Assembly: GCA_965637545.1 (NCBI GenBank)
Contig: OZ281497.1
Span: 22,568,001 to 22,632,000 of the forward strand
Direction of reading: 5' to 3'
Length of the DNA stretch: 64,000 nt
From: Phallusia mammillata
Taxonomy: Eukaryota
The notes below the pieces were generated by a model that saw nothing but the letters and a program-made list of their open reading frames with translations, was not told where the DNA came from and did no database searches. Position 1 is the stretch's first letter, and the number at the start of each line of letters is the position of its first letter. Both the position numbers and the translations under genes were made by a program. Shown here in pieces: positions 193 to 42,308 of this stretch.

Positions 193-234
193 TGCATCAG
201 TCCAGGCGGTCAGTGCAACTATGCTGGTATCTAG
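193..234 (+). pseudogene. Family X 3' fragment
   Basis: Translates to CISPGGQCNYAGI*, matching the end of 16906..17535 (CISSGGWCNYAGI*). The following ~300 bp match the 3' flank at 17534-17900. Confidence 0.7.
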
Positions 235-811
235 TAAATTACAAATACTAATTTTGTTTCTAACATTACATTTAGAACATGTACAAATGTGTATAACTTC
301 ATAACTACGTGGTTTTTGGTTTGAGGAATTTTGGTTTTCGGCATGTTAATTTTCTATTATCATATTAAATTAGAACGTTGATGCTTACTTTCTAAATTCC
401 ACTCTTTTAATTTGTGTCTTATTTTTTATTACTTTGTATGTACACCATACAAACAAAGTTGCGAATCCAAGTAAGTTTGCCGACAGCATAATTTCACACT
501 GCATAGTACATATAAACATTTAAACAAAGTGAACACCACTGCATCGCCGCTTTAGTGTTTTCGTTTCAAAAAATGCTTTTTGGTCGCCCATTTTTGAAAA
601 ACGTTTTGGTCGCCCATATTCGTTTCTGGTACACGGTTGTTCCAGTCCTTGTAAATTTAAACGGAGTATTATCAGTTTTAATATTTTGCACTGTTTGCAG
701 GCAAATACTTTTTATAAAGACAATTACCAAATCAAAATCAAAATTAAATTAAACTGAACTGCGCTTCCAAGATTAGTTTCTGGAAAAAAGTAAACTAAGT
801 GGCAAGTTATC

Positions 812-1471
812 ATGTCTTCATCTTGTTCTTCAACGTGTTCTTCAACTAGTGAAGACGAAAGTATCTTTAAGTTTTTTGTTACCTTAAAGAAACGAAAGCC
901 GGAGCTTAGAAACGGAAATGTCATCTACTATTCGTTGGACGACAGCTTTGTGGATGGATTCTTGTGGAAAATAAATGCAGAAAAAAAAACCCAAACTGAC
1001 GACCGCGATGTAACCGGTACAGCAGAGAAAATTGACACCAAAGGAAACTCTGTATTCGCAAACCAAAAGGAGGCAGAACGAGCAATTTTTCGAGTTTTTA
1101 CCAAATGCGAAATTAAACGTGTGGGGGAAGTTGTTAAAGAGGAGGACGTCGATGAATACGAAGAAGGTGACGTCGCCTTCACTTTGCGAAATGAGCGAAA
1201 CGATTACCCAATATCAAAAACGTGGAGCCTTAAAAAATTCGGAACTGACATAGAATTTAACACAGGAATTCTTAAAACCTACGAATCTGTGCAATGTGTT
1301 CTGGGTCTTGTAGAATCACCGGTTCCTATTCCATTGCTAGAGATGGTTAATATGTTGGGTGAGCATTTTGGTCGTGAAAACGTTAGGTATGTGTCTGTGT
1401 GCAAAAGTCCTATTGGGTGGTGCAAAATTGCTGGCATACCACGAGACGAAGATAGTGACTGTGAATATTAG
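812..1471 (+). CDS. Family X protein, subfamily A (219 aa, intronless, acidic C-terminal tail)
   Basis: Full ATG-TAG ORF sharing motifs IYYS, W[KR][IV], VTGTAEK, VAFTLRN, CVLGLVES, LGEHFGRENVRYV and WCKIAGI with the other intact paralogs. Closest to 41652..42308. Confidence 0.85.
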   Translation: MSSSCSSTCSSTSEDESIFKFFVTLKKRKPELRNGNVIYYSLDDSFVDGFLWKINAEKKTQTDDRDVTGTAEKIDTKGNSVFANQKEAERAIFRVFTKCEIKRVGEVVKEEDVDEYEEGDVAFTLRNERNDYPISKTWSLKKFGTDIEFNTGILKTYESVQCVLGLVESPVPIPLLEMVNMLGEHFGRENVRYVSVCKSPIGWCKIAGIPRDEDSDCEY

Positions 1472-1859
1472 CAGAACCGTCGATACTTTCGTGTGTTGAA
1501 ATATAATTGCACTGTTATGGACTTTATATTCCCATGTAAAACATTCAGTTTATCGCTTGTTGACTTGTGTTTCATTTTTTGATTACTTTGTGTGTATATA
1601 CTGTAAAAATAAAGATGCTGAACAATCTAATGGAATTAAAGGGCAGCATGAGTTAACAGTTGATGATACATCTACCACATAGGCTATGTAGGATTATCTT
1701 TAAAAATTATTAAAATTGACAAAACAAGACGAAACATAAAAAATATATTCAATCAGGTCATTTTGAAAGAAAATAACAGTAACATTATTAAAAAACAGTT
1801 TGTAGCAGTTGGTGAAAGGAATGCCTAATAATGTCACTATTTAAACAGTAAAGAACAGG

Positions 1860-2465: not shown

Positions 2466-2484
2466 TATATATATATATATATAT
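2464..2484. repeat. (TA)n microsatellite
   Basis: Run of tatatata directly visible. Confidence 0.85.
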
Positions 2485-3401
2485 TGTAATTTTTTTGCGT
2501 CAGGGTTTTTGTCGCAACAGTTTATTTGCGATTTCGATCAGTATGTTTAAAGTGTTGCTAAAGTTTTACTCTGCTGCATATTCACTCTGTTTTCAGCAGT
2601 AACAATTTGTTGATAAATCCAGAACCCCTTAAAAAAATTTGACGTTATTTAGAAAAGGCGAAGCTGGCTATGAAAGTGCCGTTTTAACCATAACGAACTA
2701 AGTCAAGAGCTGTGACCAAGTGAGTGTCGTACAGTAAAAAAGTGATAAGCCTAATTCTAAAACCTTTTATACCAAGCGACACAGTTCTTTACATGTAACC
2801 AAATACTATTTTAAAATTACAGTTTTTCGCAATGCGTGTAAAAGCAATTTGGCTCTTGTTAATTTGATAAAATGAAAATGCAATGAAAAGATTTTCGATT
2901 TTACCATTTTGCCAGAGATACTAACACCATAGCTCTTGACAGACAAAAGGTAAAATTAGATAGGTTACGTTGTCTAACACAATTATTAAAATACCAGTTG
3001 GTAGGATAGAAACTTGCGCAACTAAAACCTGATCCCAGGTCGAAACCTCGTGAGACGGGGGCGATAGGGTTCATGAACAATGTTTTAAACTTAGTTTGCC
3101 TGTTATGTTTGTTATAAGACTTTACTCCAACCCAAAATATTTTAAACCACCAGCAGATTTGAGGAAATCCTTTTAAATGAGAGCCAATTTTCTTTGCGCT
3201 GATACTGATTTGCTCAGTTTATTTGTAACTTAAGCAAGGTCAAAGCACAAAGAAAAAGAAATACGTCTAAAGTAGGATTATCAGACGTCCGGAATTCTCT
3301 GTTAAGTGAGAAAATATTTTTTCAATACACTCCCTAATGTCCGGAATTTAGTGTTTAGCAGCTTGGAAGTTTTTAAAGTGGCCGAAATTGCCTTGCTGGG
3401 A

Positions 3402-3761
3402 CAGAGTTGCAAGTCGGGCCGGGCTTTTCGGGCCGCAAAAACTCAAAACGGGCCTGCCTTTACGTTCCGTTTCCACCATTTTAGTAACAATTCTCTGGCT
3501 TTGACCTAATGCCCACCCTTCTCTAAAACGTATTGTTTACCCCATTGTCTACTATTGTTTGTTGTGTTTGTTGTCTTTTCTCTCTTTTTTTTCTCATACT
3601 TTGTTGCAACTTGCAAGGCTTTCGTGGATAGGCCTGTCAATCAAAATTTCGGGCCTAAACTGGCTGTGCAAAAACGTTTCGGGTTCGGGCCGGGTTTCGG
3701 GCTTATACTTTCGGGTTCGGGCCGGGTTCGGGCTCAGATTTCGGGCCCGCTTGCGACTCTG
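3402..3761. mobile_element. hAT-type MITE (360 bp)
   Basis: Imperfect TIRs cagagttgcaagtcgggccg / cgggcccgcttgcgactctg. Perfect 8-bp TSD tgctggga at 3394-3401 and 3762-3769. Internal ttcggg repeats. Confidence 0.85.
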
Positions 3762-4390
3762 TGCTGGGATGATTCAAGCAAGTGGACAAATGCCTCATCA
3801 TCCGTTAATATTTAAGAACGACTGCTTGGTTTCTTCCTTATTTCTGCGAACAAGGATGTCTAAAGCGCTTTACGGTTACTGTTGTCTGTGCGATTTTTTA
3901 AGCACGGATCTAAAACGCACGTAATATGGCCCAGTTTGGTTTCGAGAATAGCATTTATTGAAAGTGTCCGGAATTTGGTCCACTTAGATATGGCAACCGA
4001 GACCTAAATGTCAAATATAAAAGAATATTTTAGGTAAGGAGACGTTATCTCAACATTAAAGTAGCAAAATAGTTTGCTAGTGATTCTAGTTCACATGGCG
4101 CGCACTATAACAATCTGCTAAACATTTTACGAATAAAGAATAAAATAAAAAATTTAATTAGTTTAAAGATGAATCAACCTTTCCTGGCAAACGTAAGCGA
4201 GGTTGTTAAACATGTTCAGTTAACTAATATCACAGCAAGACACATTAAATTCCAAAAGTTATATGTATTGCAGGAAAAAACTTCCTTAAAAGTCCACTAC
4301 CACGAGGCACATGAAATTCTAGTTTACAGTTAACAAACGACTTAATATGGAAATGAAGCGAAATAGTCACAAGGTGGTACGAAATGATAA

Positions 4391-4440
4391 GCTGCATACA
4401 TTGCACAGTGTTTCGACTTGTAAGGTCTAATCAGTGCAGC
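4391..4440 (-). ncRNA. Type I hammerhead ribozyme motif, inverted copy (core-mutated)
   Basis: Minus strand reads gctgca-CTGATTA-GACCT tac AAGTC-GAAA-CA ctgtgcaa TGTA-tgcagc. Stem I is intact, but G8 of CUGANGA is T and stem II has a mismatch, so it is probably inactive. Confidence 0.65.
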
Positions 4441-4491
4441 TGGTGACGGGAGATCGGCCGCATTGGCTAGTGTAGCCTTTCAACGGCACTC

Positions 4492-4539
4492 GCACTGATG
4501 AGACCTTGTAGGTCGAAACAATGTGCACTGTCTGCAGCT
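4492..4539 (+). ncRNA. Minimal type I hammerhead ribozyme, copy 1
   Basis: CTGATGA (4495-4501), stem II GACCT/AGGTC, GAAA (4515-4518), stem III ACA/TGT around an 8-nt loop containing palindrome GTGCAC, GTC triplet 4530-4532. Stem I is only 3 bp (gca/tgc). Confidence 0.75.
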
Positions 4540-4768
4540 TATCATTTATTGGCTCTATGCTTTTACATTGGTACTGTGACTTTGAGCCGACTTCACGGTG
4601 GTTCCCAAGCAGTTGCTTGGCCACTGTGAGCCAGTTTCATTTGTGCTGTACGCCCAGTTGTGGCATCGCACAGGCTAGGTGATGCATGGGGTTGTACCCT
4701 GTTGCTCACCACAAACTGGAGTGCCGCTGGATGGCTACACTAGCCAATACGGCGCATCTCTCGTCACC

Positions 4769-4813: not shown

Positions 4814-5047
4814 AATCATTTATTGGCTCTATGCTTTTACATTTGCACAAAATAATTATTACTTAACAGAGTGGGTCGATTTAGATTGCAGTTTACAGAT
4901 AAAGGGTTGACGCAGCCGTAGCACATTTTAGTAAATACTCTGTTAAAATCGTAAACAAGATTTTTTTACACTACTGACTACACTACTGATTGTACGCGCA
5001 TCTAAATCAGACAAAATTTTAAAAGAGTATTTTTGGATGAATTATGG

Positions 5048-5822
5048 CTACTTGACGATGAATGACTTGATGGTTGTTATGATGCAGGGGTACTGTGATG
5101 CCATTTCATCTTTTGGAAAACTGCTCGAAAGTTGTAAGTCGCAGAGCTTGCTGTCACAACACCGCGCTTGACACGCACTGTTCAAAAAGTGTTTATAGGT
5201 ATAATTGTTTTATTGCTTCGCTAGAGCAAAACACCACTTTAAAAATATAATTATTATAGAAAATATTATGTTGAAAAGTTTAATGAAAAAAATAGATCTG
5301 TTAGTTGTGGAAAGTTTCACTTGCTGCACAAATTTTCATGACGAGTTGAGAGCATAAATGAAGATAATAAAATAGCATTTTGTTGTCTATTTTGGTAATG
5401 TACGATTTGTATACCTATATTTCGTGAAATCCAAGTACACTCCAGAGCTTTCAAAATTGTTTTCCATTGTTCCCACATGGTCACATAAGTCACTTGGATC
5501 GTTGCATATTTCTTTTGGAACACAAGTTATAACCGCCTGATGCTTAGCAGTAGCGGATTCTGTAAGAAAAAGCATATACGGTTAACGTTAGACGCAAAAA
5601 TGCAACAGATAGTTGAATTTCTGTACTACAGTTTACTACCAATATGAAAACAATTTTTTGGAAATTTTCTGCTTTCTGCTCACCACATATGCCATAACGA
5701 AAAGTGTATTCCAGCCTCGCGCACGTCTGATCTTCTCTACCGCAATCACACTCAACAAGTTCAGCACTACCTTGCGAGAAGACCACAAAAATTACGAACA
5801 GCAATAACTTGAATTTCTGCAT
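5048..5822 (-). CDS. Secreted Cys-rich protein, three-finger (LU / activin-receptor ectodomain)-like, 137 aa, copy 1
   Basis: Exons 5822-5684, 5559-5415, 5177-5048 with GT-AG sites and matching phases (1, 2), no internal stop. Signal-peptide-like MQKFKLLLFVIFVVFSQGSAE, 12 Cys, ends of domain CQARCCDSKLCD. Exon lengths and stop conserved in copy 2. Confidence 0.8.
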
Positions 5823-6873
5823 CCTTAATTATGTACGTAAACCCAATGACAATGTAGAGTTTTTGATAAGGAACAGTTCTCTTTGGTTGTTGCTGAAGTA
5901 GTACAGTGGACAACCCGAATGATGTAACAAAGGACATGTTAACCCAGGTAGATCACGAGTGGTTCCTCTTTGGTGCGACTCGGGTTTCGGTATGCGATGA
6001 CGCTCGCTGAATATTTGGATAAGGTTACAGCGTTTTATGTAAATACTTGCACAAACATTTACTCTACACCTGAGTTACAGCCTTAATTTTCTCTTTTGTC
6101 CGTAGCGTTTCGGACTTTTGAAAAGCAAGAGAAAAGTTTAGGAAATGATATTGTTGGGCCACCGGCAAATAACATTGCTGCTTTAAAGTGCAAAACTTTG
6201 ATTGACATAGCAGTGCACTGATCGTGGGGTAAACTAATGCGATCGTGTGGTAAACTAACCTGCAATCGCGGAGACTGAAGACGTGCATTATGCAAGCGGA
6301 CTACCACTGGATTCCGGTTGCAAGTCATAATTTTGTCGAATATTTACTTTTAACAAACAAGGGCAAAGTCATTTAATAGTGCGTAACATCTACCTTTGAA
6401 ACGCTGGAACATCACGCGTAGCGTAACATTTGCCCAGAACAAATTCTTGCACCGATAGCAAACAATTGATTGATTTTAAATTTTGATTTTAAATGCAACA
6501 ACGTTCGTGGCAAAACTGCAGTGAACTATAATCGTGGGGTAACGAAATGGTCACTTGACGCTGCAAATGTACTTGTTCAGGACTTGCAGCATATTTCAGT
6601 AGATGGTATTAAACTAAGCAGCTTTAGGTGGATGTAATCTTTGTCAAAATTTTACTAACAAACCTTTGTTAGTAGATATGAGATTAAGTTTGATTTAGTG
6701 CACATTAAATTTGCTAAGACAAACAAATGTTGATTGTCAAGTAAACGAAAGCCTTACATTTTGTGTATAATATACTAAACGCAGCTTTCAAATTGAACTT
6801 AAGTAACCAATTTTGCAATTTATGTACAACATTACATTTACGGCCACACAATTTTTGAGAAAATTTAATCATA

Positions 6874-7624
6874 ATGGCACAGTTACCAACAAAAGATTCT
6901 GTAAATTCTGTAAAAGAAATTTTCGGTGATTCTATGGCGCCCCAAGGCAGCATATGAATCAGGAAACATGATTTATTATTCTATGGGTGGAGTTTGGTGG
7001 AGAATCGTGGTAAACCTACGGACGACTGCAACGTAAAAGGAACGGCCGAAAAATGGATGAAAATGGAAGCACAGAAGAAGACGCAAAATCCTTCAACAAG
7101 TCTTTACAGGTTGCACCGTTAACAAAATCAAACAAGTTTCCCAAAACGTTACGAGTGATTTACTGGTGCGTGGGGTTGCCTTTACGCTTCGAAATGATTC
7201 ACAACCTGCTGTTTTAGCGAGTTTGAGTGGTGTAACCATTCCAAACCTAGATGAAAGTGGTATATGTGTACAAACGGGTATATTGGAAAACGAAATATCG
7301 GTAAAATGTGTGTATGAAGGGTTTTTTAGGTTTGGTTTGGGTGACCGCTAAGTAGCTTTAAGAGACCGCAAGTGTTTCATTTAAATACCAAAAAATAGCC
7401 ATATTTGCTTAAACGAAATTTTGGGAAACCGCTGAAGAAATTTGTGGACCGTTTCGGTCCCCCAAAACACTTTAAAAAAACAGTGTATGTATGGTTTTGC
7501 TGAGTCATGTGAAGCTGTTCCGTTGTTAACTGTCGTAAACATGCTGAGTGATTATTTTGGCCTTAGGTGGGTGTCAAAATGTACGAACAAAGGTGCTTGG
7601 TGCAACTATGTCGGCATACAGTAA
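6874..7624 (+). pseudogene. Family X pseudogene (subfamily C), frameshifts plus insertion
   Basis: Motifs GNMIYYS, VAFTLRND and WCNYVGIQ* are recognisable across several frames. Interrupted by a ~172-bp insertion. Confidence 0.85.
7317..7488. mobile_element. Short insertion in family X pseudogene
   Basis: Absent from the paralog at 21355-21385 (aaaatgtgtgtatggttttgc). Flanked by duplicated gtatg. No clear TIRs. Confidence 0.5.
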
Positions 7625-9748: not shown

Positions 9749-9814
9749 AAAGACTGTCTTAATATCATTAAAAAGACTGTCTTAATATCATTAAAAAGAC
9801 TGTCTTTAATATCA
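9749..9814. repeat. ~22-bp tandem repeat x3
   Basis: aagactgtcttaatatcatta unit repeated three times. Confidence 0.85.
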
Positions 9815-10639: not shown

Positions 10640-10890
10640 ACCAGAAACATGATTCATTATTCTCTGGATGGAGTAATTGTTGTGTAAGCTACGGAAGATT
10701 GCAACGTCAAGGGAACGGCAGAAAAATATATATGAAAATGATAGCACCAAATAAGAAGCAGAGTGAATTCTTTAACGTGTCTTTATACTAGGCTCCTTAA
10801 AACATGAGTGATGCAATGGTGTGTAAAGTTCCCTTAACGCTTCGAAATGATTCACAATCTGTGTCAAAGAATTAGATTGGTGTAAACCTT
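10640..10890 (+). pseudogene. Family X degenerate 5'/central fragment
   Basis: DNA matches to aaacatgattcattattctctggatgga, tgcaacgtcaagggaacggcagaaaaa and acgcttcgaaatgattcacaa. Multiple stops and deletions. Confidence 0.7.
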
Positions 10891-12746: not shown

Positions 12747-13397
12747 ATGTCTAACCAACCACCACTACTACCGCCACAACCACAAATACAAAAATACCAG
12801 TTTTCAGTGACTCTTGGCCTTTCCAGGCCGGATTTAATATTTGGAAACATGATATATTATTCCCCCGATGGAGCATATTGGTGGAGGATTCAAGTTGACC
12901 CAACGGCCGATCGCAACATCACCGGCATCGCGGAAAAAATCGATGTCAATGGTACCGCCTTGCTGGCCGACCCGCAGGAGATAACCCGTTCCCTTTCTTG
13001 TGTCTTTACACGTTCGAATGTTAAAAGTGTAACACCAGTTAAATTGCCTCCCACAATCTACCAAAAGGTGTACAATGTTGCATTCACACTCAGGAAAGGC
13101 ACACAATTTCCTGATCCACCGAACTGGACTGGTGTAAATGTAACTATTTCTGGTGTAAACATAAAAACAGGCCCATTAAAGAAGAAAGATTCTGTCCAAT
13201 CTGTGTATGGTTATGCATCCACACCTAATCGTATACAATTACTAAATGTGGTGAACATACTATGTAATTATTTTAGCCCCACAAACGTAAGATATGTGTC
13301 CGAATGTAAGAATCCACTAGGTTGGGGTTTCTTTGCTGATGTAGAGATAGAATTACCAAGATATGCACACATGGACGAATCTTTACTCTGGTGTTAA
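12747..13397 (+). CDS. Family X protein, divergent subfamily (216 aa from first ATG)
   Basis: First ATG at 12747 within ORF 12705..13397. Motifs YQFSVTL, GNMIYYS, NITGIAEKIDVNG, VAFTLRK, SVYGYAS, NVRYVSEC. Confidence 0.85.
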   Translation: MSNQPPLLPPQPQIQKYQFSVTLGLSRPDLIFGNMIYYSPDGAYWWRIQVDPTADRNITGIAEKIDVNGTALLADPQEITRSLSCVFTRSNVKSVTPVKLPPTIYQKVYNVAFTLRKGTQFPDPPNWTGVNVTISGVNIKTGPLKKKDSVQSVYGYASTPNRIQLLNVVNILCNYFSPTNVRYVSECKNPLGWGFFADVEIELPRYAHMDESLLWC

Positions 13398-16905: not shown

Positions 16906-17535
16906 ATGCCTTATGAAACAGCAAAGAATCCAAGCGTGGATCCAGTGGAAAAATACCAGTTTTCCGTGTCGCTCCACTCTGCACGCCGCAGGAATGATTT
17001 GGCATCTGGAAACACTATTTATTATTCTCTTGACGGTGGTTTTGCAAAAGGATTTTTATGGAAAGTTTCGGTAAATCCTGCTCAAAGCCGAAACATCACT
17101 GGAATAGCAGAAAAAATCGATGTAAATGGTCTTACAGTGCAGACTGACCAACAACAAGCTAAGTGGGCTCTTAAACGTATTTTTACCTATTGCAATGTTG
17201 ATAGTATCACACCAGTCACTTGTGCCCCTACAAATGATCTTATGGTCCGTAATGTCGCTTTCACACTTCGAAATGACCCGCAGTTAGTTGATCTGAAAAA
17301 TTTGGCCGGTGTAAACAATATAATACATGTTGATGGTCACAACGTAAATGTAAAAACTGGTCAACTGGCACAAGAAGAATCTGTTCAATGTGTGTATGGC
17401 TTTGCTCAATCAATGGAACCTATTTCGTTGCTAGCTGTGGTAAATATGCTGGGTAATCATTTTGATCATGCAAACGTAAGATATGTGTCCAAATGCATTA
17501 GTTCTGGTGGTTGGTGCAACTATGCTGGTATCTAG
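16906..17535 (+). CDS. Family X protein, subfamily C (209 aa)
   Basis: Full ATG-TAG ORF with all family motifs. The only intact copy ending in WCNYAGI, i.e. keeping the Tyr. Confidence 0.85.
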   Translation: MPYETAKNPSVDPVEKYQFSVSLHSARRRNDLASGNTIYYSLDGGFAKGFLWKVSVNPAQSRNITGIAEKIDVNGLTVQTDQQQAKWALKRIFTYCNVDSITPVTCAPTNDLMVRNVAFTLRNDPQLVDLKNLAGVNNIIHVDGHNVNVKTGQLAQEESVQCVYGFAQSMEPISLLAVVNMLGNHFDHANVRYVSKCISSGGWCNYAGI

Positions 17536-20433: not shown

Positions 20434-21513
20434 ATGGCACAGTTATCAACATAAGATTCTGAAATACAAATTTTCAGAGACTCTTGAGTAACCCAAGGCA
20501 GCATATGAACCAGGAAACATTATTTATTATTCTATGGATGAAGTTTGGTGGAGAATTGCGGTGAAACCTTCGGTCGACTGCAACGTTCAAGGAACAGCCG
20601 AAAAAATAGATCAGAGTGAGAGCACAGAAGCAGATGCAGAGTGGCTCCTTCAACGGGCCTTTACAGATTGCACCGTTAACAAAATCAAACAAGTTTCCCA
20701 AAACGTTACGAGTGATTTACTGGTGCGTGATGTTGCCTTTACGCTTCGAAATGATTTACAACCTGCTGATTAGGTTAAAGTCAGACTTGGACAACTAGAT
20801 AATTCTAGTTGTCTAGTTGGGCAAATTAGAGCAAAATGGCGGTAATTCTAGTTCTAATCTAATTTAGAATTATAGAGTAAGCTCTAATTCTAATTCTAAT
20901 CTAATTTACAGTTTTCCCAAAATCGCTAGTTTGTCCAATGGCACTTTTAGGCATGTGATCTGAGCATGCATTTTTTAACCAAAGCCCACAAAACCATGCA
21001 ATTAACAAGACCAAACTACATCACTGAAACACGTTTTTCGGTGAAATTTGGCACTCAGCTCCGTTTAAACACGTTTTAGATGCACCGAATCGTATTGTTG
21101 TAAATGTGCAAATCTTCCAGTTCAAATTTGAAACAAACTAAAGTTGGTTGGCTCAAATCTAATTCTAGTTTAAATTCTAGTTTAATTTTTAGATTTTGAG
21201 AAAATTCTAATTCTAATTCTAATCTAATTTGCAAAAAAATGGGATGCTCTAATTTTAATTCTAATCTAATTTGAAAAACCGAAAAAAAATCTAGTTGTCC
21301 AAGTCTGGTTAAAGTGGTCTATGTGTACAAACGGGTATATTGAAAAACGAAAGATCGGTAAAATGTGTGTATGGTTTTGCTGAGTCATATGAATCTGTTC
21401 CGTTGTTAACTGTCGTAAACATGCTGAGTGATTATTTTGGTCGTGCAAACCTTAGGTGGGTGTTAGAATGTACGAACCAAGGAGCTTGGTGCAACTATGC
21501 TGGCATACAGTAA
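20434..21513 (+). pseudogene. Family X pseudogene (subfamily C), early stop plus MITE insertion
   Basis: ATG GCA CAG TTA TCA ACA TAA, then family motifs, interrupted after VAFTLRNDLQPA by a MITE. Ends WCNYAGIQ*. Confidence 0.85.
20782..21307. mobile_element. hAT-type MITE (526 bp)
   Basis: Perfect 19-bp TIRs cagacttggacaactagat, perfect 8-bp TSD gttaaagt (20774-20781, 21308-21315), subterminal tctaattctaat repeats. Confidence 0.92.
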
Positions 21514-26688: not shown

Positions 26689-27285
26689 ATGGCGTCAGCA
26701 ACCGAAGATTCTGTTCATTTTTTGGTGCAAAAATTCAAGTTTTCGGTGACTCTTGAGAACCCCAAGGCAGCATATTTTTGAGGAAATGTGATTTATTATT
26801 CTATGGATGGAATTTGGTGGAGAGTTGTGGTGGAACCTACCTATGAACGCAACGTTAAGGGAACGGCAGAAAAACTGGATAAAAATGGTAGCACCAAAGA
26901 GGAAGCAGAATGGATCCTTCAACGTGTCTTTACACGGAGCACTGTTGACAAAATCGAACAAGTTTCCCAAAGAGCCACGAGATTCACAACCTGCAGTGAT
27001 TCACAACCTGCTGTTTTAGAGAATTGGATTGACGTAAACCTTCCAAATCTAGGTGATAGTGGTGTAAACATAAAAACGGGTAGTTTGGCAGAAGAACCAT
27101 CTGTCCAATGTGTGTATGGTTTAGCTGAGTCATTGGAATCTGTCCCGTTGTTAACTGTCGTAAACTTACTAAGGAATCATTTTGGTCGTGCGAACCTGAG
27201 GTGTGTGCTAAAATGCACGAACCAAGAAGCTTGGTTCAACTATGCTGGCATACAGTACATTTCAAGTACTGTAAATGCAATGTAG
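26689..27285 (+). pseudogene. Family X near-intact pseudogene (subfamily C)
   Basis: ATG at 26689 is in frame with ORF 26788..27285, with one TGA at 26779-26781. The VAFTLRN motif is replaced by a local duplication of gattcacaacctgc. Confidence 0.8.
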
Positions 27286-28293: not shown

Positions 28294-28402
28294 ACCTACA
28301 GTAATGCAATTCCACTGTGAGGCGGATCTAAAGTTTCGTTTTGCAACACGTTAGTGTGACTAATTTGTTTTCAAGATGTACGTCACTTTTATCACTGTAG
28401 AG

Positions 28403-31005: not shown

Positions 31006-31644
31006 CTTTTAACAGTGCCTAATATTTACTTATGAAGTGCTGCTTCATCACAAGTAAAGCAAGTTTCCATAGTCAATCATTTGCGCAATACAAATTGTTG
31101 CATCAATAGCAAATTACACTGATGATTTTCAAAGCAACAACGTTCAGTGGCAAAATACTGTAGTGAACTTTTATCGTGGGATAACGAAATGGTCCATTTT
31201 AACGTAGCAAAGGTATCGCGAGTATTTACGGGTTCGCTTCATCTGAAATTAAAATAGGCTTAGGCAGCTTGTATTAAACAGGGCAGCTTTAGGCGTTTAA
31301 AAAACATGTTGAATGATATTTGACCCTGTAAACGTTAGGTGTGTGTCCGAAACCAAAAATCCAGTAGAATGATGCAACAAAGCTGATATGCAGAAGAATA
31401 AAAGTACTCAAGATTGGCATTAAGAAGCGTATTCCAGTATTGAAAGTGTAGAAATGTTTGTTAATTTTGCGACTAGCGTGGGTGATTGACACGTCCATTG
31501 ATTTATGTATTCCTTTTTAATTGTCTGCTAATTTGCCGTAGAAGTTTAAAAATAATATTAAAAATAATACAATGTCAATAGAAATGTTTTGCTTTTCAGT
31601 GGTAAGCACCTTTTGAGTTAAACAAATTTTACACTTCATTTGCC

Positions 31645-32301
31645 ATGGCTAAATGTTCTACACAGGACACTACTGCAAGCATTCCTGGAATGAGAAAAAA
31701 ATTCCAGTTTTCAGCAAAACTGCCCGACAAACGAGACTATTATGCAAAGGGGGTTTTGATATATTATTCTCTTAAAAAAAGTTTTGCTGCCGGTTACATG
31801 TGGCGAGTAAATCTTCAAAAAACATATAGCGTCAACGTAAGTGGATCAGTGGAAAAATACAAAATTTCAAACGGGCGAGGAGAACCGGTAGAGTTTTATA
31901 AAGATGAAGCAAAGGAAGCTATTTCTAAAACATTTACGAACTGCACAAAAGTAGAAATAACAACGACATTGAAGGATGTGCCTAAAAAAGTTTATTGGGA
32001 TCAATTTGCCATTACCTTTCATTTTGCTGGCGATACACTACCATCTACTGATGAAAGTACTGATGAAAGCAGGTTTATCATAAACGTCCCTGGAGAATCT
32101 CCGAGAAAAATTCGAACAGGCCCATTAAACAGCGACAGAGGATGTGTTTATGGTTTTGTCGAATTTACAAATGATGTAGCCTTGCTCGACGTTGTGCAGC
32201 AGCTAGGCGACAAACAAGGTCGAGAAAATGTAGTGTACGTGGCCAAGTGTTTAAACAAGATAAAATGGCTACAATTTACAGGAATAGAAACAGGCACTTA
32301 A
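31645..32301 (+). CDS. Family X protein, subfamily B (218 aa)
   Basis: Full ORF, close paralog of 24118..24771. Upstream ~1 kb also duplicated (23150-24100 vs 30170-31620). Confidence 0.85.
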   Translation: MAKCSTQDTTASIPGMRKKFQFSAKLPDKRDYYAKGVLIYYSLKKSFAAGYMWRVNLQKTYSVNVSGSVEKYKISNGRGEPVEFYKDEAKEAISKTFTNCTKVEITTTLKDVPKKVYWDQFAITFHFAGDTLPSTDESTDESRFIINVPGESPRKIRTGPLNSDRGCVYGFVEFTNDVALLDVVQQLGDKQGRENVVYVAKCLNKIKWLQFTGIETGT

Positions 32302-32721
32302 AAACACCAATGAAAAATTATAGTTTAATAGTCTTGGAAATTGTCTGATTAAAAACTTTAAAGTTGTTTATTTAGTTACTGTAGCACGTAAATTAAATAA
32401 ATAAGATATGATAATCCAAGCATTTAAAAATATAGCATAAATAAAGTTATCTACTGTACTGTATTTCGCTGTAATGTAGCTTTGTGATTTTTTTTTTGAG
32501 AAATGATTTACTCCATCGTAGCATACAATGATTTTGCCGTGCACGTTGGAAAGGCAATTTGTAGTTTGCTGCAGTGCAATGTTTTATCAATAAAAATGTG
32601 TGTGACACGTCTTTACAGATTGAAAACAAAACGGTCTACAAAATTGAAGAGTTTCCATGTAACGGAAGTTGTGCAACATTACAACAAACGCATTGCAAAC
32701 TTAATTTACCAGCAGGTAGAC

Positions 32722-32861
32722 AATCTGCACCGTTGTTAACTGTCGCAAACTTACTTTGTGATCATTTTGGTCGCGCAAACCTTAGGTGTGTGTTAGAATG
32801 TACGAACAAAGGAGCTTGGTGCAAATATGTTGGCATAAATACTAAATTTAAAGTAGTGTGA
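32722..32861 (+). pseudogene. Family X 3' fragment
   Basis: SAPLLTVANLLCDHFGRANLRCVLECTNKGAWCKYVGI with no 5' part. Confidence 0.75.
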
Positions 32862-33829
32862 TTGCAATGTAGATGTGTCTTATGAAGAAAGCATAAAAAA
32901 CGGAATACTTGTTTGGATTCTTTTTTCGTATGTTCATGATTGCTTTTTACACATGTAGTTAAAATACAATTGCAAATGTTTTGAAATAAAGGCCTAAAGG
33001 TCTTTATTTAGGCAAAGAGAAGATTGGCTCGTAATTTCTGCCGACATTATCACAAGCGCTCTGTATGAACAAGTTGAGTAACAAAGGCCAATTGCCATTG
33101 TAACATGCGAATGAATTTTTGTGCGAAATTTGTGCTTCGTTTTCCGCTTCAAAAATCTAAACATCTTAATAAGCAAACCGGATACCTTATTAATCTTTTC
33201 ATCTAAACCCCGTATAAATGCCTTTATTTGCACTTATTATTTCCTAAAACCCGATTCAAATTGTATTCACAGTTTTCTTGATCTGTATAATTGTGTTACC
33301 CATATACCGTTAAGTTATGTTGGGTGTCACCCGAGCTTGATTCGGAGAAACTTCTATCAAGTTGTTGTTGGAAAGATCTGAAGCACTTTGACCCACACAA
33401 GGTGCTAATCCTGTATGTTCAAATACTGGAAGCATTTCGAAGTTAAACAACTTTATAAACAATACCATAAAGCTTTACCCTCAACCCTTTTCATTATGCC
33501 AGCGAATAAAAGTTTAAGTTTTTCGTACAACTTTCGTTTGCCTTTCGTAAGTGTGCGTGTGAATTAATAAATGTGTTTTGATGAATCATTTGAGGTATAA
33601 TAAACTGCAGTATAATGAAATTCCACCGCGAGACGGATCTAAAGATTCGTTTGGCAACACGTACAGTGTGACAAATTTGTGTTCATGATAATTTACCTCA
33701 CTTTTATCACTGTACAGTCATTTAAGTTGCTATTTAAATCACATAAGGGAAGCTGTAATTTCCTGTAACTCGATTTTACTGCGAATGATGAATCATTAGT
33801 CTACTTAGTTTAACTTTGCGTGGTTAAAC

Positions 33830-34038
33830 ATGGTATAAACGTAAAGACAAGCGAAGACACAGAGGAAGAATCAGTTCAATGTGTGTATGGTGTTGTTCAA
33901 GTATTTTCCCATGCACCTTTTTTGTTGTTAACTGTGGTAAATATGCTGGGTGATCATTTTGGTCGTGAAAACGTAAGGTATGATGTGTCCGAATACATCA
34001 GTCCAGGTGGTTGGAGTACTTATGCTCCTATCTTGTAA
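33830..34038 (+). pseudogene. Family X 3' fragment
   Basis: GINVKTSEDTEEESVQCVYGVVQ...LLTVVNMLGDHFGRENVRYDVSEYISPGGWSTYAPIL* joined directly to 3'-flank sequence of another copy. Confidence 0.75.
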
Positions 34039-35959: not shown

Positions 35960-36607
35960 ATGTCGAATTCTAAACAAATATTTCGAAGCAGCCCTGGTAT
36001 GTACAAATTGTTTCAGTTTTCCGCTGAATTGCAATCGAAAAAAGACTATTACAAAAAGGGTCTGTTGATATATTATTCTCTTGGAAAAAGTTTTGCTGAT
36101 GGATACTTGTGGCGAGTACAGCTTAATCCCACCTATAGCGTCAAAGTAAATGGGACAATGGAAAAAATCAAAATTTAGAACGGGCGACGAGAATCGGTAA
36201 AGATCGGTGAAAAAGAAGCAGAGGAAGCTATTTCTAAAACATTTACAGGCTGCAAAGATGTAAAAATAACAACTGCAGTAAAACCTTCACCGGTGGAGGT
36301 AAAGGCAAAACAATTTGCCTTTCGGTTCGACGGTGATTCAATGCCAGCAACCGTTGCTAACAGCTTTCTTGTCAACGGCTTTGAAGTTGACACTAAAACA
36401 GGACCATTCAATCGCGACAAAGAATGTGTTTACGGTTTCGCAGAATCCAAAACTGATTTTGCCTTGCTGGACATGGCGCTTCAGCTAGGAAAGGAATATG
36501 GTTGCCAAAATGTGGTGTATGTGGCCAACTGTTTGATGAAAAAAGAATGGCTTAAACATGCAGAAATAGAAATTCCGAAACCAAATATGCATACCCAACT
36601 TCAATGA
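35960..36607 (+). pseudogene. Family X subfamily B copy with a single premature TAG
   Basis: ORFs 35960..36178 and 36293..36607 are one frame broken only by TAG at 36176-36178. Paralogs have TTA or TCA at this codon. Confidence 0.8.
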
Positions 36608-37920
36608 AGCACTGTAGTTTGTAAAGTAGCCTCCTTAGGAAAGTGTAACCTTGTTTATGTTCTAGATGTTGTTATTGCAGCATGGAAAAACATCAATATA
36701 AGCACAAAAATCGAAAAAATAGTAGGATGTAGTTCAAACTTGTCAAAATCAACAGGATTGTACAATTTTGAAATGTGTCACTTTTCTCATTGTTGTTTTT
36801 TGGTTTGGGAAAAAATGTTTTTCTCCACTAAGGAATATTACACGTTAAGAAAACGAATTTTGATTTGCTGTATTGTTTTTCAATAAATGTTAGATAAAAC
36901 AGTTTTGAATTTATAAAGCAGTAAACTATTTGTATCTAAGTTTAGATAAACGTACTTTTCGGTTTATTGAGCGAAATAAAACACACATAAACAGTAACGA
37001 AATAAAATGAAAACCACAAAGCAAGTACCGCAAAGGGTATGAGCATAAAATAGAGAAAGTGAAAGTCAAGGCCTTTTCTCGCCGCCGAATGGCGGAAGTG
37101 CATGGGCCCTGAAAGAAACAAGGTAAAGTGATCTGTTACAAAAAATGCATTAAATATATAATCTAAGTTGAGATAAACCTAAATTCATAAATAAGGTCAG
37201 CCCGGAAATATTCGTGCCGACCAGCGATAACGGTATACTCTTATATAACCCCTACGGTTACAATAGTTGAATGTCGCCTATGTTCTGTGATAAACTTTAT
37301 TTGTGCAAGCTATGACAAATAGGAAGAAACTAGTCTTCTTTTGTTGTGAGAGAAAATTAATTAGTCGTCACCTTGATATTGCGCCAAATACATTCCATTG
37401 AGTAAAACGCTTTGTTGTCTCAATTGTTGACTCAAAGTTACTTCATACAATTCTGTACGGCAAACAATACCCTGATGTTTTCTATTAATCAGGGTCAGCG
37501 CTTGGTTTGCTTTGAACTTGCCGACAGCGTAGGGTAGGCGGATTTTTCTTCCAAAGCTGATTAACATTCCAGATTTTTGCAGGTGTAGTCGGAACAACGT
37601 CATTGACGCGATCAAATAGCCCCGCCACCGCACGTGTCCAGTGTAAAACGCCAGTCTAGTTTTAAATGCACCGTTGGGAGGTGTTAATTTAATCTTCATT
37701 TGGTGTTTGAGCAAAAATGTAACATGCGGAATTTCGGCAAAAGAAGATCCGTAACCTCTATTTCAAACAATTGTAGAGTTTACCTTATTGAAGTATTTAA
37801 CCTTGTACTTGTTGGAAACTAAGTGTTATTACACTTGTTTTCGAAACAGACTTTGTTTTGCCGTTGAAGTAGGTTAGTTGCAACGAGATGAACAAAGTAT
37901 TGTTGACTCACAATAAGAAA

Positions 37921-38130
37921 AAGTCGGAGTTAAAAAATGGAAACTTCATTTATTAATTTTTGGCTGGACATTTTACCAATGGATATTCGTGGAAAAATTG
38001 TGATGGACCCAACGCAAGATGAAAACACTACTGGGATAGCATAAAAAATCGATGTGAATGGCATTGCAACATCTCAACAACAGCAAATGGTGAAGCAAAT
38101 GACTGCTCTCTGTATTAAAGTGTTAAACTA
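37921..38130 (+). pseudogene. Family X 5' fragment
   Basis: KSELKNGNFIY*FLAGHFTNGYSWKIVMDPTQDENTTGIA*KIDVNG. Confidence 0.7.
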
Positions 38131-38384: not shown

Positions 38385-38516
38385 GTGATTAGCTCCACTG
38401 CAATATCGAGCGAAGTGGTTTCTTCCACCACACTTCAAACATAGCCTTCCTCAGGCAGGACACGTTCTGACGTCATGTAGCAACGAGCAGAATCTGCAAA
38501 CTCCAGGCACTGGAAA
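38385..38516 (-). mobile_element. Ty3/gypsy-like Gag zinc-knuckle remnant
   Basis: Minus-strand CRFCSLLHDVRTCPA*GRLCLKCGGRNHFARYC: paired knuckles, the second a canonical CX2CX4HX4C. Contains a stop. Confidence 0.65.
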
Positions 38517-41500
38517 TTGGTTACCGTTTTGTGCCACATTGCCACTCCATTGCATATAGCTTCATTGTATTTAAATTCAACCGGTTACCTGTAACGACTG
38601 TCAAGTTTAAGACGTGGTGCGCGTTTATATAGGACACTTGACATCATAACACATGGATGAAATCTAGCGATAAATACATACATCACTATCTCCTCTGGTG
38701 GTGTTTTGAATCGCTACTTGTGTTTATTTTGGGCATAATGCCACATACTGAGATGGAAAAAATAATCATAGCAAGCAACAAACAAGTAAAAACCACGTTG
38801 AATATTTAATGTATACCAAAATGAAATAAAAAATGAATGTCAAAACATCTCAACAATTAAATATCATAACATTACAGAGTTGTAAGTCAACCCGACCCGA
38901 TTCCAAATCATGTTTAAAAAAATTTGCTTCGTTGAAATCAAGACATGTCTTTGGTTTCAATTGTAGGCTATTTATTCTTTTTTCCAGAAATATTATCACG
39001 TTCGTTCGATGTCGGGTGGCAAGAAGCACTACCCTTGATTTAGGCAACCCCAATGAAGATGTGTCTAACAAAGTAAGCATAGAAATATATAAATATTTGT
39101 GTCGGCTAGTCCCGTCGCTGTGTTTATAATTGCGCGAATTTGAAATATAGTTGCAATAAGGAGAGTACGTTCAAAAATTTATTTAGGCAAGCAAAAAGCG
39201 ATTGTGCTTGGGCTAAGTTAGCGGTAATAAAGTCTTGTAAGGTGGAAATGATTGCGTGTGCGTTTAATATTACGGTGTCCCCTGACTTAATACCCCTTTC
39301 TATTTTGTATTTATAAACACCCGATGCAAACTCTGATTACCTATTTCCTACTATAGTTGTAAAACATTTTATTGTTGCGTTCGTTAGATGTCGTCCGAGT
39401 GTTGTGAGAAGCTTCGTTCCTGTTGTTTGTTTGAACAAGTGAAAGTGTTCCGTAGCTAAACACAGTGATAATCAAACAAAGTTACATTCTTTATCCATTA
39501 CCATCTCGCAATAATAATCCAGAACGTTGACGCGATGTGCGTGAATTGCTTTATTTGGACGCGAGACCATGTGACTATTTCGACCGCTATAGGCTACTAC
39601 CTTTTAGGCCTCGTGTTGTTTGGACTGATGATTAGAAAACGTGGTTGTGTTAGAACTTTTGAAGTTATACGTTGCCGTTACTGTAATGTCTTGCATTTAT
39701 ATATTTTATTAAACTTGTTTTTAGTTGAGACCCTGTTTGCTGTTACCATGTCACTTTTAGTTTAAGCGATATGTGCAGGGAAACTTGGCATTTACCAGGT
39801 ATGGGCAGTGATCCGGATATAAATGTGTATGGGGTTGATATAAGAAACTTTAACCGGCAAGTTTACATAGCCAACTCTACTTATCTCGAAATCCCCTGTC
39901 AAATTTGGGAACACCAAACTATTTTCGGTCACAAAATGTAAAATAAAACACCAACTATGAATATATTTACGGGAGAACATATGTTACTACCAACGATTCT
40001 GAAACGTCCATTCATGTGTGCTATTTTTAAATGTCCACACCACGATTGGACCAATCTATGCTGGTTACGTACCGTAAGATTCGGTGGCAACCTTAACGAA
40101 AAAAACGAATTAGGGTGATATTTATTATCGTAAGCCAGTCCCCATGATAGCACTTAGACCACACGTAGGTAATTTATTTTGCTTAAACGTCCCGCCTTAA
40201 GTTTGTGGTTTAACCACAAGAAGTCAGGCGCATCACCGACGTATAGTATCGTCAGTGTATTTTGGAAGTCAAGCGCAACAGAACTGTGTGCGGTAAATTC
40301 TTTTCTAAAGCCAGTAAGCTTATTTTCTGGTAGGGCAGCCGTTTTCAAATTTATATTTCGTTGCAAATTATTTAGAAACGGAGAAATTATTGCCAAAAGT
40401 TTTAGCAAAACATGAACAGTGACATTATAATGGCGTATACCAGCTAAAACCACATGGTCAAAAACGATTTATTTTAAGTTTGAGTTGATATTTTCTCCAG
40501 TTTATAGCAGTTACTACATACTTTCTGTTATTTTTTGTCAAAAAACATCATACTAAATTTGCGCGCTGATATGTACATCCCCTTCCCTAGATATCCGACT
40601 TTAATAAAAACAACTAAGTTATTAGTTACTAAAGTCACACGAAGCCATGTCATAAAATTTGTATTATTAAAGCGAGACGTCAGTAAGTCAGGTATACGCG
40701 CCAGACAAGGTCGAGTGTAGTTAACTTATTACCCATAAAAGCAAATGTTTAAACAGCAACCGCTCGTACACAATACAAAAAGGCGGGAAACGTTATCATA
40801 CTTAGTAGAGCGATGGGTTGTGTTCGCAAGACAAGGTATATGTCTTCGCTATGATTCAAAACTTAAGATGCCAGTCTGTATTCAGGCCATGTAAGGCTTA
40901 CTAGATTTTAAGTTGGTTTCAATTTGTTCATTAAAGCAGTAATGGAAAAGTCTAGCACTGGCATTTAAAATGTAAAAGTGCAGCACAAGTTCCATTTTGT
41001 TGCCAGTGGTTTTATTTATTCATTTGAACTTACCACCAATATCATTTTACGTTAGCTTTGTAGGCTTGATAATCTTGTATTTACAACTGGGATCAGTCCT
41101 GAAGCATTTGTACGCTCGTGTAATTATCGAATTAATACTTGGTTTAGCTAGGGCTACCATATTTCTATCCCATAAAGATTTGTTGAAAAGAACATGAAAA
41201 ATTACTTTTTGGAGGCCGAATTAATCAAAAAAACAATTGCCCCACCAAAAAACAATCCTTAGAAATTAAACGGTATTAAAATATAATTCGGATAAAGTTT
41301 AACGTTTATCACATCACCACACTAAAATAACCTTTTTTTCAAAACAAAATGTAAACTCCATCTGTATACTTTAAAAAATAAGCTGCAGATTATTATTTGG
41401 CTGTTTTCAAAGGCATAATTGTCACTCATGTAGTTGGTAAATCAGAAATTCTTTAAAAAAGGAGGACATTCGGGTCAATTAATGGTTTAACTTGAAAATG

Positions 41501-41651
41501 TAGTTTTGTACAAAAATTGTCAGTTTGTGTGGTTTATGTTTAGGTTTTTTCTTTGTTTTATATTTTATTTTTTTCTACTATGTACATAGTTATGTTTAGG
41601 TTTAACATTAGAAAAAAATCGAAAGTTTATTATAAAGCAACTATTTAAAAC

Positions 41652-42308
41652 ATGGCTTCATCTCAACTCGCGACCAAAACTTCCATTTGTGACTCAGAAG
41701 ATTTCCAATTTTCGATCACCATGAACCGGCCAAGGCCGGAACTCAAAGATGGTAATGTGATCTACTACTCATTTGATAACAGTTTTGCGAATGGATACTT
41801 GTGGAAAATATATGCGGGACCAACTGACGACTGCAATATGTCTGGAACGGCGAAAAAAGTTGCTACAGATGGGTCAGCAGTTTTATCAAGCTTGCGTGAT
41901 GCCGCAAAGGCAATTTCATGCACTTTTACTGACAGCCAGATTAAAACAATAAACAGCGTTTCAACTCCGCAGCCTGCTAATGAAGAAAACAAGGTATTTG
42001 ATGTTGCCTTCACACTTAAAAACTTCGAAGACAAATACCCAGAATTATCTCACTGGAGTTTGGAGAAAGTGGGAACTGATATAGAAGTCAGAACTGGAAC
42101 CCTTAAAACTTACGAATCCATTAAATGTGTACTTGGTCTTGCGGAGTCCCCTTCGCCTTTCCTATTGCTACACATGGTTAATATATTGGGCGAACACTTT
42201 GGCAGAAAAAACGTTAGGTATGTGTCAGAGTGTAACAATCCGATAGGTTGGTGCAAAGTGGCTGGCATACCTTTGCACGATGATGATGATTATGATAACA
42301 GGCATTAA
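41652..42308 (+). CDS. Family X protein, subfamily A (218 aa, acidic tail)
   Basis: Full ORF, closest to 812..1471. Last copy of the array. Confidence 0.85.
   Translation: MASSQLATKTSICDSEDFQFSITMNRPRPELKDGNVIYYSFDNSFANGYLWKIYAGPTDDCNMSGTAKKVATDGSAVLSSLRDAAKAISCTFTDSQIKTINSVSTPQPANEENKVFDVAFTLKNFEDKYPELSHWSLEKVGTDIEVRTGTLKTYESIKCVLGLAESPSPFLLLHMVNILGEHFGRKNVRYVSECNNPIGWCKVAGIPLHDDDDYDNRH

What the first reader, a model, noticed from the sequence alone, without database searches (positions are those of the whole stretch)
193..42308. 42-kb tandem array of an unannotated intronless protein family undergoing birth-and-death evolution
Seen: at least 15 same-strand copies. Intact at 812, 12747, 16906, 24118, 31645 and 41652; single-stop at 26689 and 35960; insertion-disrupted at 6874 and 20434; fragments at 193, 10640, 32722, 33830 and 37921. 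They form about four subfamilies that share motif blocks but differ strongly between them. Every neighbouring gene has introns, while these CDSs have none. Inference: heavy duplication, divergence and loss like this is typical of host-defence or recognition genes, and intronless CDSs fit a viral or retroposed origin. I do not recognise the family.
Basis: partly seen in the sequence, partly recalled or inferred. Interest (0 to 1): 0.8.

Follow-up and report, generated by a model that had tools for sequence, protein, structure and literature searches.

The report
Ascidian gene cluster, Rep-like fold
A 42-kb same-strand cluster of 16 copies (6 intact) of a sea-squirt-only, uncharacterised 210-residue protein family is real; half of the predicted structure has the shape of a viral/plasmid Rep DNA-binding nuclease domain without its catalytic residues, and in another sea squirt the domain is fused to an immune-type kinase.

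Summary
Window 191-42308 carries 16 same-strand loci of one family: 6 intact single-ORF genes (209-219 aa), 4 near-full-length broken copies and 6 fragments, built by multi-kb tandem duplications that include the flanks. Intact copies are old paralogues (dS saturated) with pN below pS in all 15 pairs, so this is not neutral DNA. The family has no Pfam, NCBIfam or PDB sequence match. It is not orphan, though: an exhaustive profile search finds 32 hits, 31 of them family relatives, and every named one is ascidian (Phallusia, Clavelina, Ciona), all uncharacterised. In Phallusia the domain is the C-terminal part of a TKL kinase (RIPK/IRAK/TAK1 type). AlphaFold models are very confident (pLDDT 93-95). 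The whole protein matches no solved structure. The C-terminal module alone has the Rep nuclease/origin-binding fold (TM 0.5-0.6, weak E-values, 11-18% identity) but lacks the His pair and catalytic Tyr. I read it as a non-catalytic binding module of a kinase-linked intracellular pathway, probably immune or cell-death related; this function is inferred, not shown. Retroposed origin is not supported. Viral origin rests on fold likeness only.

The parts
191..376 (+). Fragment: extreme 3' end of a family CDS (about 44 nt) plus 3' flank
   Evidence: 85% DNA identity to 17492-17677, the end and 3' flank of the intact copy at 16906
812..1471 (+). Intact family gene, 219 aa, subfamily with 41652
   Evidence: ORF; HMM score 325; 52% aa identity to the copy at 41652
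6917..7618 (+). Near-full-length broken copy (2 stops and 1 insertion counted; possibly further small frame changes)
   Evidence: tblastn chain covers residues 18-209 of the closest intact copy at 43% identity; lies in a 3-kb unit duplicated at 18444-22043
10644..10885 (+). Fragment of the N-terminal part of a copy
   Evidence: DNA similarity of 66-76% to 6963-7235 and 26783-26935; weak HMM match, E 0.046
12747..13397 (+). Intact family gene, 216 aa from the ATG, subfamily with 16906
   Evidence: ORF; HMM score 299
16906..17535 (+). Intact family gene, 209 aa; the copy modelled: N-terminal module about residues 16-104, C-terminal Rep-OBD-like module about residues 113-207
   Evidence: ORF; AlphaFold pLDDT 93.2, pTM 0.88; C-terminal module pLDDT 95.1; fold search
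20462..21507 (+). Near-full-length broken copy (1 stop, 1 frame change, 1 insertion counted)
   Evidence: tblastn chain covers residues 16-209 of the closest intact copy at 48% identity
24118..24771 (+). Intact family gene, 217 aa, subfamily with 31645 and the broken copy at 35960
   Evidence: ORF; 63% aa identity to the copy at 31645
26725..27252 (+). Near-full-length broken copy (1 stop counted)
   Evidence: tblastn covers residues 14-209 at 44% identity in a single frame
31176..31393 (+).
   Evidence: tblastn chain covers residues 137-200 of the closest intact copy
31645..32301 (+). Intact family gene, 218 aa
   Evidence: ORF; the only unsaturated pair, with 24118: dS 0.42, dN 0.235, ratio 0.56
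32664..32846 (+). C-terminal fragment
   Evidence: HMM E 1.9e-12; tblastn covers residues 149-206
33820..34032 (+). C-terminal fragment
   Evidence: HMM E 1.7e-20; 60% aa identity to the copy at 16906
35960..36598 (+). Full-length broken copy (1 stop counted)
   Evidence: 55% aa identity to the copy at 24118 over residues 5-217 in a single frame
37897..38095 (+). N-terminal fragment (2 stops, 1 frame change counted)
   Evidence: tblastn covers residues 21-86
41652..42308 (+). Intact family gene, 218 aa, last member of the array
   Evidence: ORF; HMM score 330

Best explanation
Shown: the window holds a tandem, same-strand cluster of an ascidian-restricted gene family. Each gene has a single uninterrupted coding exon for a soluble protein of about 210 aa, with no signal peptide or membrane segment. 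The cluster grew by unequal-crossover-type duplication of multi-kb units. It decays by pseudogenisation, leaving 6 intact genes against 10 broken or partial copies. The intact copies are old and constrained. The protein folds into a compact two-module alpha+beta structure. The C-terminal module (about residues 113-207) has the fold of Rep nuclease/origin-binding domains but none of their catalytic residues. In Phallusia the whole domain sits C-terminal to a TKL-group kinase of the RIPK/IRAK/TAK1 type. Inferred: the domain is a non-catalytic binding module, for a protein partner or possibly a nucleic acid. It couples recognition to an intracellular kinase pathway of the kind that carries innate-immune and cell-death signals in other animals. 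The stand-alone proteins of this array would be kinase-less versions that bind the same partner or ligand, acting as adaptors, sensors or competitors. Diversification of what they bind would drive the lineage-specific expansion and turnover.
For: Array and copies. Beyond chance: 7 long ORFs against 0 in shuffles. Constraint: pN below pS in all 15 pairs; 0.56 for the one unsaturated pair; 0.15-0.51 for the 12 saturated pairs with a defined ratio; undefined for 2. Soluble, no hydrophobic N-terminus or segment, pI 4.5-9.1. Relatives: 32 hits, best E 5e-27; all named ones are ascidian. Kinase fusion: Pkinase at 32-300 plus the family domain at 353-546 in P0001. The kinase scores equally to RIPK2, RIPK1, IRAK4/1, TAK1 and plant receptor-like kinases. 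P0001's domain is the nearest outside relative of 3 of the 6 window proteins. A kinase fragment 40% identical to P0001's kinase lies 6 kb upstream, on the same strand, of the relative P0005 in five independent contigs. Structure: pLDDT 93.2 and 95.1. About 30 of the top 50 PDB hits of the C-terminal module are Rep or replication-initiator DNA-binding domains with TM 0.5-0.6. Catalytic signature absent. Lineage-specific expansion: the window copies are monophyletic. Tandem pairs or clusters occur in other assemblies.
Against: No expression, localisation or interaction data exist for any member. The kinase link rests on one transcript-derived protein from one species plus one suggestive gene neighbourhood. 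The window itself has no kinase exon in the array. An immune role of that kinase is assumed from its group, not demonstrated. Synonymous sites are saturated for 14 of 15 pairs, so the ratios are rough and no site-wise test of diversifying selection was possible. Net charge varies from -15 to +7, which argues against a shared nucleic-acid-binding surface. Foldseek E-values for the Rep-like fold are weak (0.015 and above).
Confidence: 0.4

Rival explanations
1. The family descends from a captured Rep gene of a small circular ssDNA virus or rolling-circle replicon. The nuclease/origin-binding domain was kept as a nucleic-acid-binding module after losing catalysis and the helicase domain, and was then duplicated as a host gene.
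For: The C-terminal module's best PDB matches are Rep nuclease domains of nanovirus, circovirus and geminivirus and the plasmid pMV158 RepB OBD (TM 0.5-0.6, prob 0.9-1.0). About 13 partial matches to Rep proteins appear in the viral structure library. The single-exon CDS is shared across ascidians.
Against: There is no sequence-level signal: no Rep family in Pfam even at E up to 10 for 31 members; no viral protein identified among the 32 hits of the exhaustive search (all named hits are ascidian and the unnamed ones checked lie on eukaryote-type contigs); no PDB sequence hit. Foldseek E-values are 0.015 or worse and identity is 11-18%. No column has a His share of 25% or more, and there is no conserved Tyr in the terminal helix. 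There is no helicase domain. An extra N-terminal module has no Rep counterpart. The fold is a common alpha+beta sandwich type, so convergence is plausible.
Confidence: 0.12
2. It is a real, constrained ascidian gene family with a function unrelated to defence, for example developmental, reproductive or metabolic. The kinase fusion in Phallusia would be a one-off domain shuffle or a gene-model artefact.
For: The fusion was seen only once among proteins of 300-960 aa. Clavelina P0014 is a singleton among housekeeping genes. There are no immune-type domains in any stand-alone member.
Against: The fused domain is the closest outside relative of half the window copies. A second kinase-adjacent arrangement exists. 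The tandem expansion with many pseudogenes and lineage-specific monophyly is the pattern usually seen in recognition or defence families (established knowledge, not tested here).
Confidence: 0.3
3. The copies are processed retrogenes or neutral duplicated DNA without function.
For: The CDS is intronless, and 10 of 16 loci are broken or partial.
Against: There are no poly(A) tails or target-site duplications. Flanks are co-duplicated over kilobases. All copies are on one strand. pN is below pS in every pair despite saturated dS. Six ORFs of 209-219 aa are kept open in 36% GC DNA where shuffles give none. The family is conserved across three ascidian genera.
Confidence: 0.03
4. The ORF belongs to a transposable element that has inserted repeatedly.
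For: There are many copies with decayed members. One relative lies 5.5 kb from LTR-retroelement genes.
Against: The arrangement is uniform in orientation and tandem. No transposase, reverse transcriptase or terminal repeats accompany the copies. Divergence between copies is at saturation, with constraint on protein sequence. Single-copy relatives sit between ordinary genes.
Confidence: 0.03

Closest known systems
HUH Rep nuclease / origin-binding domains (Rep of nano-, circo- and geminiviruses; RepB of plasmid pMV158; more distantly the papillomavirus E1 DNA-binding domain)
   Same: The C-terminal module (about 100 aa) has the same fold and order of secondary-structure elements. TM-scores are 0.5-0.6 normalised either way, over 93-113 aligned columns.
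   Different: No detectable sequence similarity. No metal-binding His pair and no catalytic Tyr. No helicase or oligomerisation domain. An additional N-terminal module. Encoded by constrained host genes in a chromosomal tandem array.
RIPK / IRAK-type signalling kinases that carry a non-catalytic recruitment domain (death domain, CARD, RHIM)
   Same: In Phallusia P0001 a TKL kinase of this group is followed by a non-catalytic globular domain, which is this family.
   Different: The domain is not a death fold or RHIM (no Pfam hit; alpha+beta rather than a helical bundle). The window's genes lack the kinase entirely. The kinase cannot be assigned to RIPK rather than IRAK, TAK1 or the Pelle-like kinases.
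Stand-alone 'domain-only' paralogues of signalling proteins, such as CARD-only and pyrin-only proteins of primates (comparison from general knowledge, not tested)
   Same: Short proteins consisting only of the interaction domain that a larger signalling protein also carries, arising as lineage-specific tandem duplicates.
   Different: Unrelated fold. A regulatory role is not shown here. The direction of evolution (fusion or fission) is unknown.

Membership tests
HUH endonuclease (Rep) superfamily | Nuclease-domain fold (antiparallel sheet with flanking helices) | tested here: met
   The C-terminal module model (pLDDT 95.1) matches solved Rep nuclease/OBD domains with TM 0.5-0.6 both ways, although the best Foldseek E is only 0.015
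HUH endonuclease (Rep) superfamily | Conserved pair of metal-binding His (or His plus Gln) on a central strand | tested here: not met
   No alignment column of 31 members reaches a 25% His share; the maximum is 19% at one column
HUH endonuclease (Rep) superfamily | Conserved catalytic Tyr in the helix that follows the sheet | tested here: not met
   No Tyr-rich column in the terminal helix. Tyr shares of 45-59% occur only in strand columns 164 and 196, and of 97% in the N-terminal module
HUH endonuclease (Rep) superfamily | Profile-level sequence similarity to Rep families | tested here: not met
   Pfam scan of 31 members at E up to 10 lists no Rep family; PDB profile search finds nothing relevant
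Rep of circular ssDNA viruses (endogenous viral element) | Superfamily-3 helicase domain after the nuclease domain, and similarity to viral proteins | tested here: not met
   The proteins end right after the module. There is no helicase Pfam hit. The exhaustive search identified no viral protein among its 32 hits: all named hits are ascidian and the unnamed ones checked lie on eukaryote-type contigs
RIP kinases | Protein kinase domain | tested here: not met
   No kinase-like HSP anywhere in the window with P0001's kinase part as query; no Pkinase hit in the six proteins
RIP kinases | Death domain, CARD or RHIM | tested here: not met
   No such Pfam family in the window proteins or in P0001
Processed retrogenes | Poly(A) tract and target-site duplications at the copy boundaries | tested here: not met
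   No A-rich tail and essentially no shared flanking 11-mers for the six intact copies; flanks are co-duplicated
Processed retrogenes | An intron-bearing parent gene elsewhere | not testable with these tools
   Only the window is available for this genome. Relatives in other ascidians are also single ORFs
Birth-and-death tandem multigene family | Same-strand tandem paralogues with co-duplicated flanks | tested here: met
   16 loci, all on the + strand; multi-kb duplicated units at 65-93% identity
Birth-and-death tandem multigene family | Mix of intact genes and pseudogenes or fragments | tested here: met
   6 intact, 4 near-full-length broken, 6 fragments
Birth-and-death tandem multigene family | Purifying selection on the intact members | tested here: met
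   pN below pS in 15 of 15 pairs; ratio 0.56 for the unsaturated pair. The other ratios are rough because dS is 1.36 or more
Birth-and-death tandem multigene family | Diversifying selection at particular sites | not tested
   Needs unsaturated orthologue and paralogue sets from close species and a codon-model program, neither of which was at hand

The most novel reading that the evidence does not exclude
An ancient capture of a Rep-type origin-binding domain gave ascidians a new, non-catalytic recognition module. Fused to a RIPK/IRAK-type kinase in some species and expanded as stand-alone copies in others, it serves as an intracellular sensor family (possibly for foreign nucleic acid) in a chordate lineage that lacks most vertebrate cytosolic sensors.
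Probability: 0.07. Interest if true: 0.85.

Novelty: new variant of a known kind. Interest (0 to 1): 0.55.

Why it matters
Tunicates are the closest living relatives of vertebrates, and their innate immune repertoire is only partly mapped. This is a confidently folded, taxonomically restricted domain with no curated family. It is physically linked to a RIPK/IRAK-group kinase in one species and expanded with rapid turnover in another. That makes it a concrete candidate for a lineage-specific signalling or recognition module. The Rep-like fold without catalytic residues would add an example of that fold reused as a plain binding domain in a cellular protein, whatever its ultimate origin. At minimum, the family deserves a domain entry and annotation across ascidian genomes.

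Tried and rejected
1. Pfam, NCBIfam, PDB sequence and profile searches, Rfam and tRNA scans: nothing relevant. The single-member weak hits (DUF5881, STING_LBD, Flu_PB2 and others) do not recur among members, and I take them as chance.
2. Word-index protein searches returned few or no relatives. The exhaustive HMMER search was needed.
3. Exact look-up of a window protein: not on record.
4. Internal duplication of the two modules: hhalign probability 0.5%, the same as a reversed control.
5. Full-length model against PDB: only noise (TM 0.25 or less). Hits to CYTH, dCache and ACT proteins were rejected.
6. P0029, a 1171-aa bacterial protein of prealbumin-like repeats (E 7e-5): judged spurious.
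7. Retrogene and transposable-element readings were rejected.
8. The species of the window could not be named. By its nearest relatives it is an ascidian, and it is clearly not human.
One search was made before any tool likened the region to a virus; it printed piece-by-piece match coordinates for the broken copies. After, in my reasoning, I recalled a few short Rep motif strings from memory. I stopped, used none of them in any call or in this report, and tested the likeness only by fold search and column shares.

Full report
**1. Observation**

The window is 36-39% GC eukaryotic DNA without N runs. They align over their whole length with 27 invariant columns, at 30-53% identity to the first sequence. 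ORFs of this length do not arise by chance here: there are 7 of at least 200 aa in the window against 0.0 in 20 shuffles.

tblastn with the six proteins, a profile HMM on six-frame pieces and a self-blastn find ten more loci, all on the + strand.
- **Near-full-length broken copies:**
  - 6917-7618: 2 stops, 1 insertion.
  - 20462-21507: 1 stop, 1 frame change, 1 insertion.
  - 26725-27252: 1 stop.
  - 35960-36598: 1 stop.
- **Fragments:** six in all.
  - 191-376 carries only the last 44 nt or so of a CDS plus its 3' flank.
  - The other four are at 10644-10885, 32664-32846, 33820-34032 and 37897-38095.

The self-comparison shows that whole units of 1-3.5 kb, flanks included, were duplicated. 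Examples are 5033-8088 against 18444-22043 at 78-81%, and 23177-24742 against 30161-32290 at 78-93%.

**2. Are they genes?**

Nei-Gojobori estimates give pN below pS in all 15 pairs of intact copies.
- Synonymous sites are saturated (dS 1.36 or more, or undefined) for 14 pairs, so the duplicates are old and those ratios are rough.
- The one unsaturated pair (24118/31645) has dS 0.42, dN 0.235 and a ratio of 0.56.

This excludes neutral duplicated DNA.

Other features:
- Five of the six intact copies have a polyadenylation hexamer within 300 nt of the stop.
- Several copies, and the relative P0005, have a polypyrimidine-AG acceptor-like site 2-115 nt upstream of the ATG. The CDS is single-exon, but the transcript may not be intronless.
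- The proteins have no hydrophobic N-terminus or membrane segment, and their pI ranges from 4.5 to 9.1. They are therefore soluble and intracellular.

**3. Relatives**

Pfam, NCBIfam and PDB sequence searches find nothing. The word-index search was blank. Because the claim rested on absence of relatives, I ran the exhaustive profile search. It found 32 proteins at E of 1e-3 or better, the best at 5e-27, most of them 170-226 aa.

Every hit that carries a name is ascidian:
- Phallusia mammillata (P0001).
- Clavelina lepadiformis (P0014, and P0023 with its cluster member P0049, which lie on one scaffold).
- Ciona intestinalis LOC104266239 (P0025/P0043).

All of them are 'uncharacterized' or carry an automatic name. 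The unnamed ones come from ENA assemblies with Mb-scale contigs and from metagenomes. There the gene is again a single ORF, and several members share a contig. One bacterial repeat protein (P0029) is judged spurious.

The six window proteins are monophyletic in a neighbour-joining tree of 44 members. The array is therefore a lineage-specific expansion relative to the sampled species.

**4. The kinase link**

P0001 (550 aa) has a protein-kinase domain at 32-300 and the family domain at 353-546. Its kinase scores equally (E 1e-18 to 5e-17) to RIPK2, RIPK1, IRAK4/1, TAK1 and plant receptor-like kinases. It is a TKL-group kinase of the innate-immune signalling type, and the label 'RIPK1-like' is not specific.

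P0001's domain is the nearest outside relative of three of the six window proteins. In five independent contigs, a kinase fragment 40% identical to P0001's kinase lies 6 kb upstream of the relative P0005 on the same strand. That could be a second fusion with a long intron, or simply a conserved neighbourhood. No other fusion was found among proteins of 300-960 aa, and the window has no kinase exon in the array.

**5. Structure**

With a 31-sequence alignment, AlphaFold gives pLDDT 93.2 and pTM 0.88 for the copy at 16906. The model has two modules (about 16-104 and 113-207), each with strands, a helix and a further strand in similar order. hhalign sees no sequence trace of an internal duplication.
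- **Whole model:** it matches no solved structure (best E 5e-3, TM 0.25 or less). The viral library gave only partial matches of about 100 columns to Rep proteins of small circular ssDNA viruses.
- **C-terminal module alone** (pLDDT 95.1): about 30 of its top 50 PDB matches are Rep nuclease/origin-binding domains (nanovirus, circovirus, geminivirus, plasmid pMV158 RepB) or the papillomavirus E1 DNA-binding domain. TM-scores are 0.5-0.6 in both normalisations, but E is 0.015 or worse and identity is 11-18%.

So the fold is shared, but homology is not demonstrated.

The defining catalytic features fail. No column of the 31-member alignment reaches a 25% His share. No Tyr is conserved in the terminal helix. 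No Rep family appears in Pfam even at E up to 10. The family is therefore not an HUH nuclease. At most it is a non-catalytic derivative or a convergent fold.

**6. Interpretation**

The birth-and-death tandem family is shown. The proposed function is inferred: a binding module of a kinase-linked intracellular pathway, probably immune or cell-death related, with the stand-alone copies as kinase-less adaptors, sensors or competitors. It rests on domain association and evolutionary pattern alone, and I put it at about 0.4.

The rivals are:
- a constrained family with an unrelated function (0.3);
- an anciently captured Rep domain (0.12, compatible with either functional reading);
- retrogenes or neutral DNA (0.03);
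- a transposable-element ORF (0.03).

Retroposition hallmarks are absent.

Noticed in passing
window 59198-63459 (- strand): Exons of an SLK/STK10-type kinase C-terminus. Two PKK (polo kinase kinase) domain exons at 61234-61551 and 63013-63459 are separated by an intron (Pfam E 6.5e-9 and 7.4e-10). A Ser-rich exon-like ORF lies at 59198-59569.
   Followed up: partly
window 44533-45231 (- strand): A 232-aa Pro/Gln-rich ORF, the longest in the window, with no Pfam hit. It is probably an exon of an unrelated neighbouring gene just past the end of the array.
   Followed up: partly
window 23177-23516 and 30161-30501: A 340-bp upstream stretch is 93% identical between two duplication units whose adjoining CDS and flank are only 78% identical. 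This could be recent gene conversion or a young mobile insert.
   Followed up: no
window, 30-115 nt upstream of the ATGs at 812, 16906, 24118, 31645, 41652; L004 2 nt upstream of the ATG: Polypyrimidine-AG acceptor-like sites precede the start codons. This suggests a 5'-UTR intron or spliced-leader trans-splicing rather than truly intronless transcripts.
   Followed up: partly
window 4382-4547: A self-complementary (palindromic) stretch of about 170 bp at 73% match, in a spacer between copies.
   Followed up: no
window 3677-3745, 9749-9815, 57805-57844: Three short tandem repeats (periods 32, 23 and 15). The first is GC-rich and lies inside a 121-aa spurious-looking ORF.
   Followed up: no
L004-L008, about 2800-3530 (+), 6 kb upstream of the family gene: A protein-kinase fragment 40% identical to the kinase of the Phallusia fusion protein lies on the same strand as the family member P0005. 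It is conserved in five contigs from ENA and JGI metagenome samples.
   Followed up: partly
L001 1-4500 (- strand): Genes of an LTR retroelement (reverse transcriptase, RNase H, integrase, SCAN-like capsid) lie 5.5 kb from the relative P0009. I took it as an unrelated neighbour and did not examine it further.
   Followed up: no
P0025 / P0043 (Ciona intestinalis LOC104266239): The two annotated isoforms differ by a 7-residue indel and three nearby substitutions inside the C-terminal module. This could be alternative splicing or allelic variation.
   Followed up: partly
L009 9938-10564 and 16614-17234 (+): Two intact family ORFs lie 6.7 kb apart on one strand in a different assembly (ENA ERZ21736675). 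At least five family proteins map to that 392-kb contig, so clustering is a family trait.
   Followed up: partly
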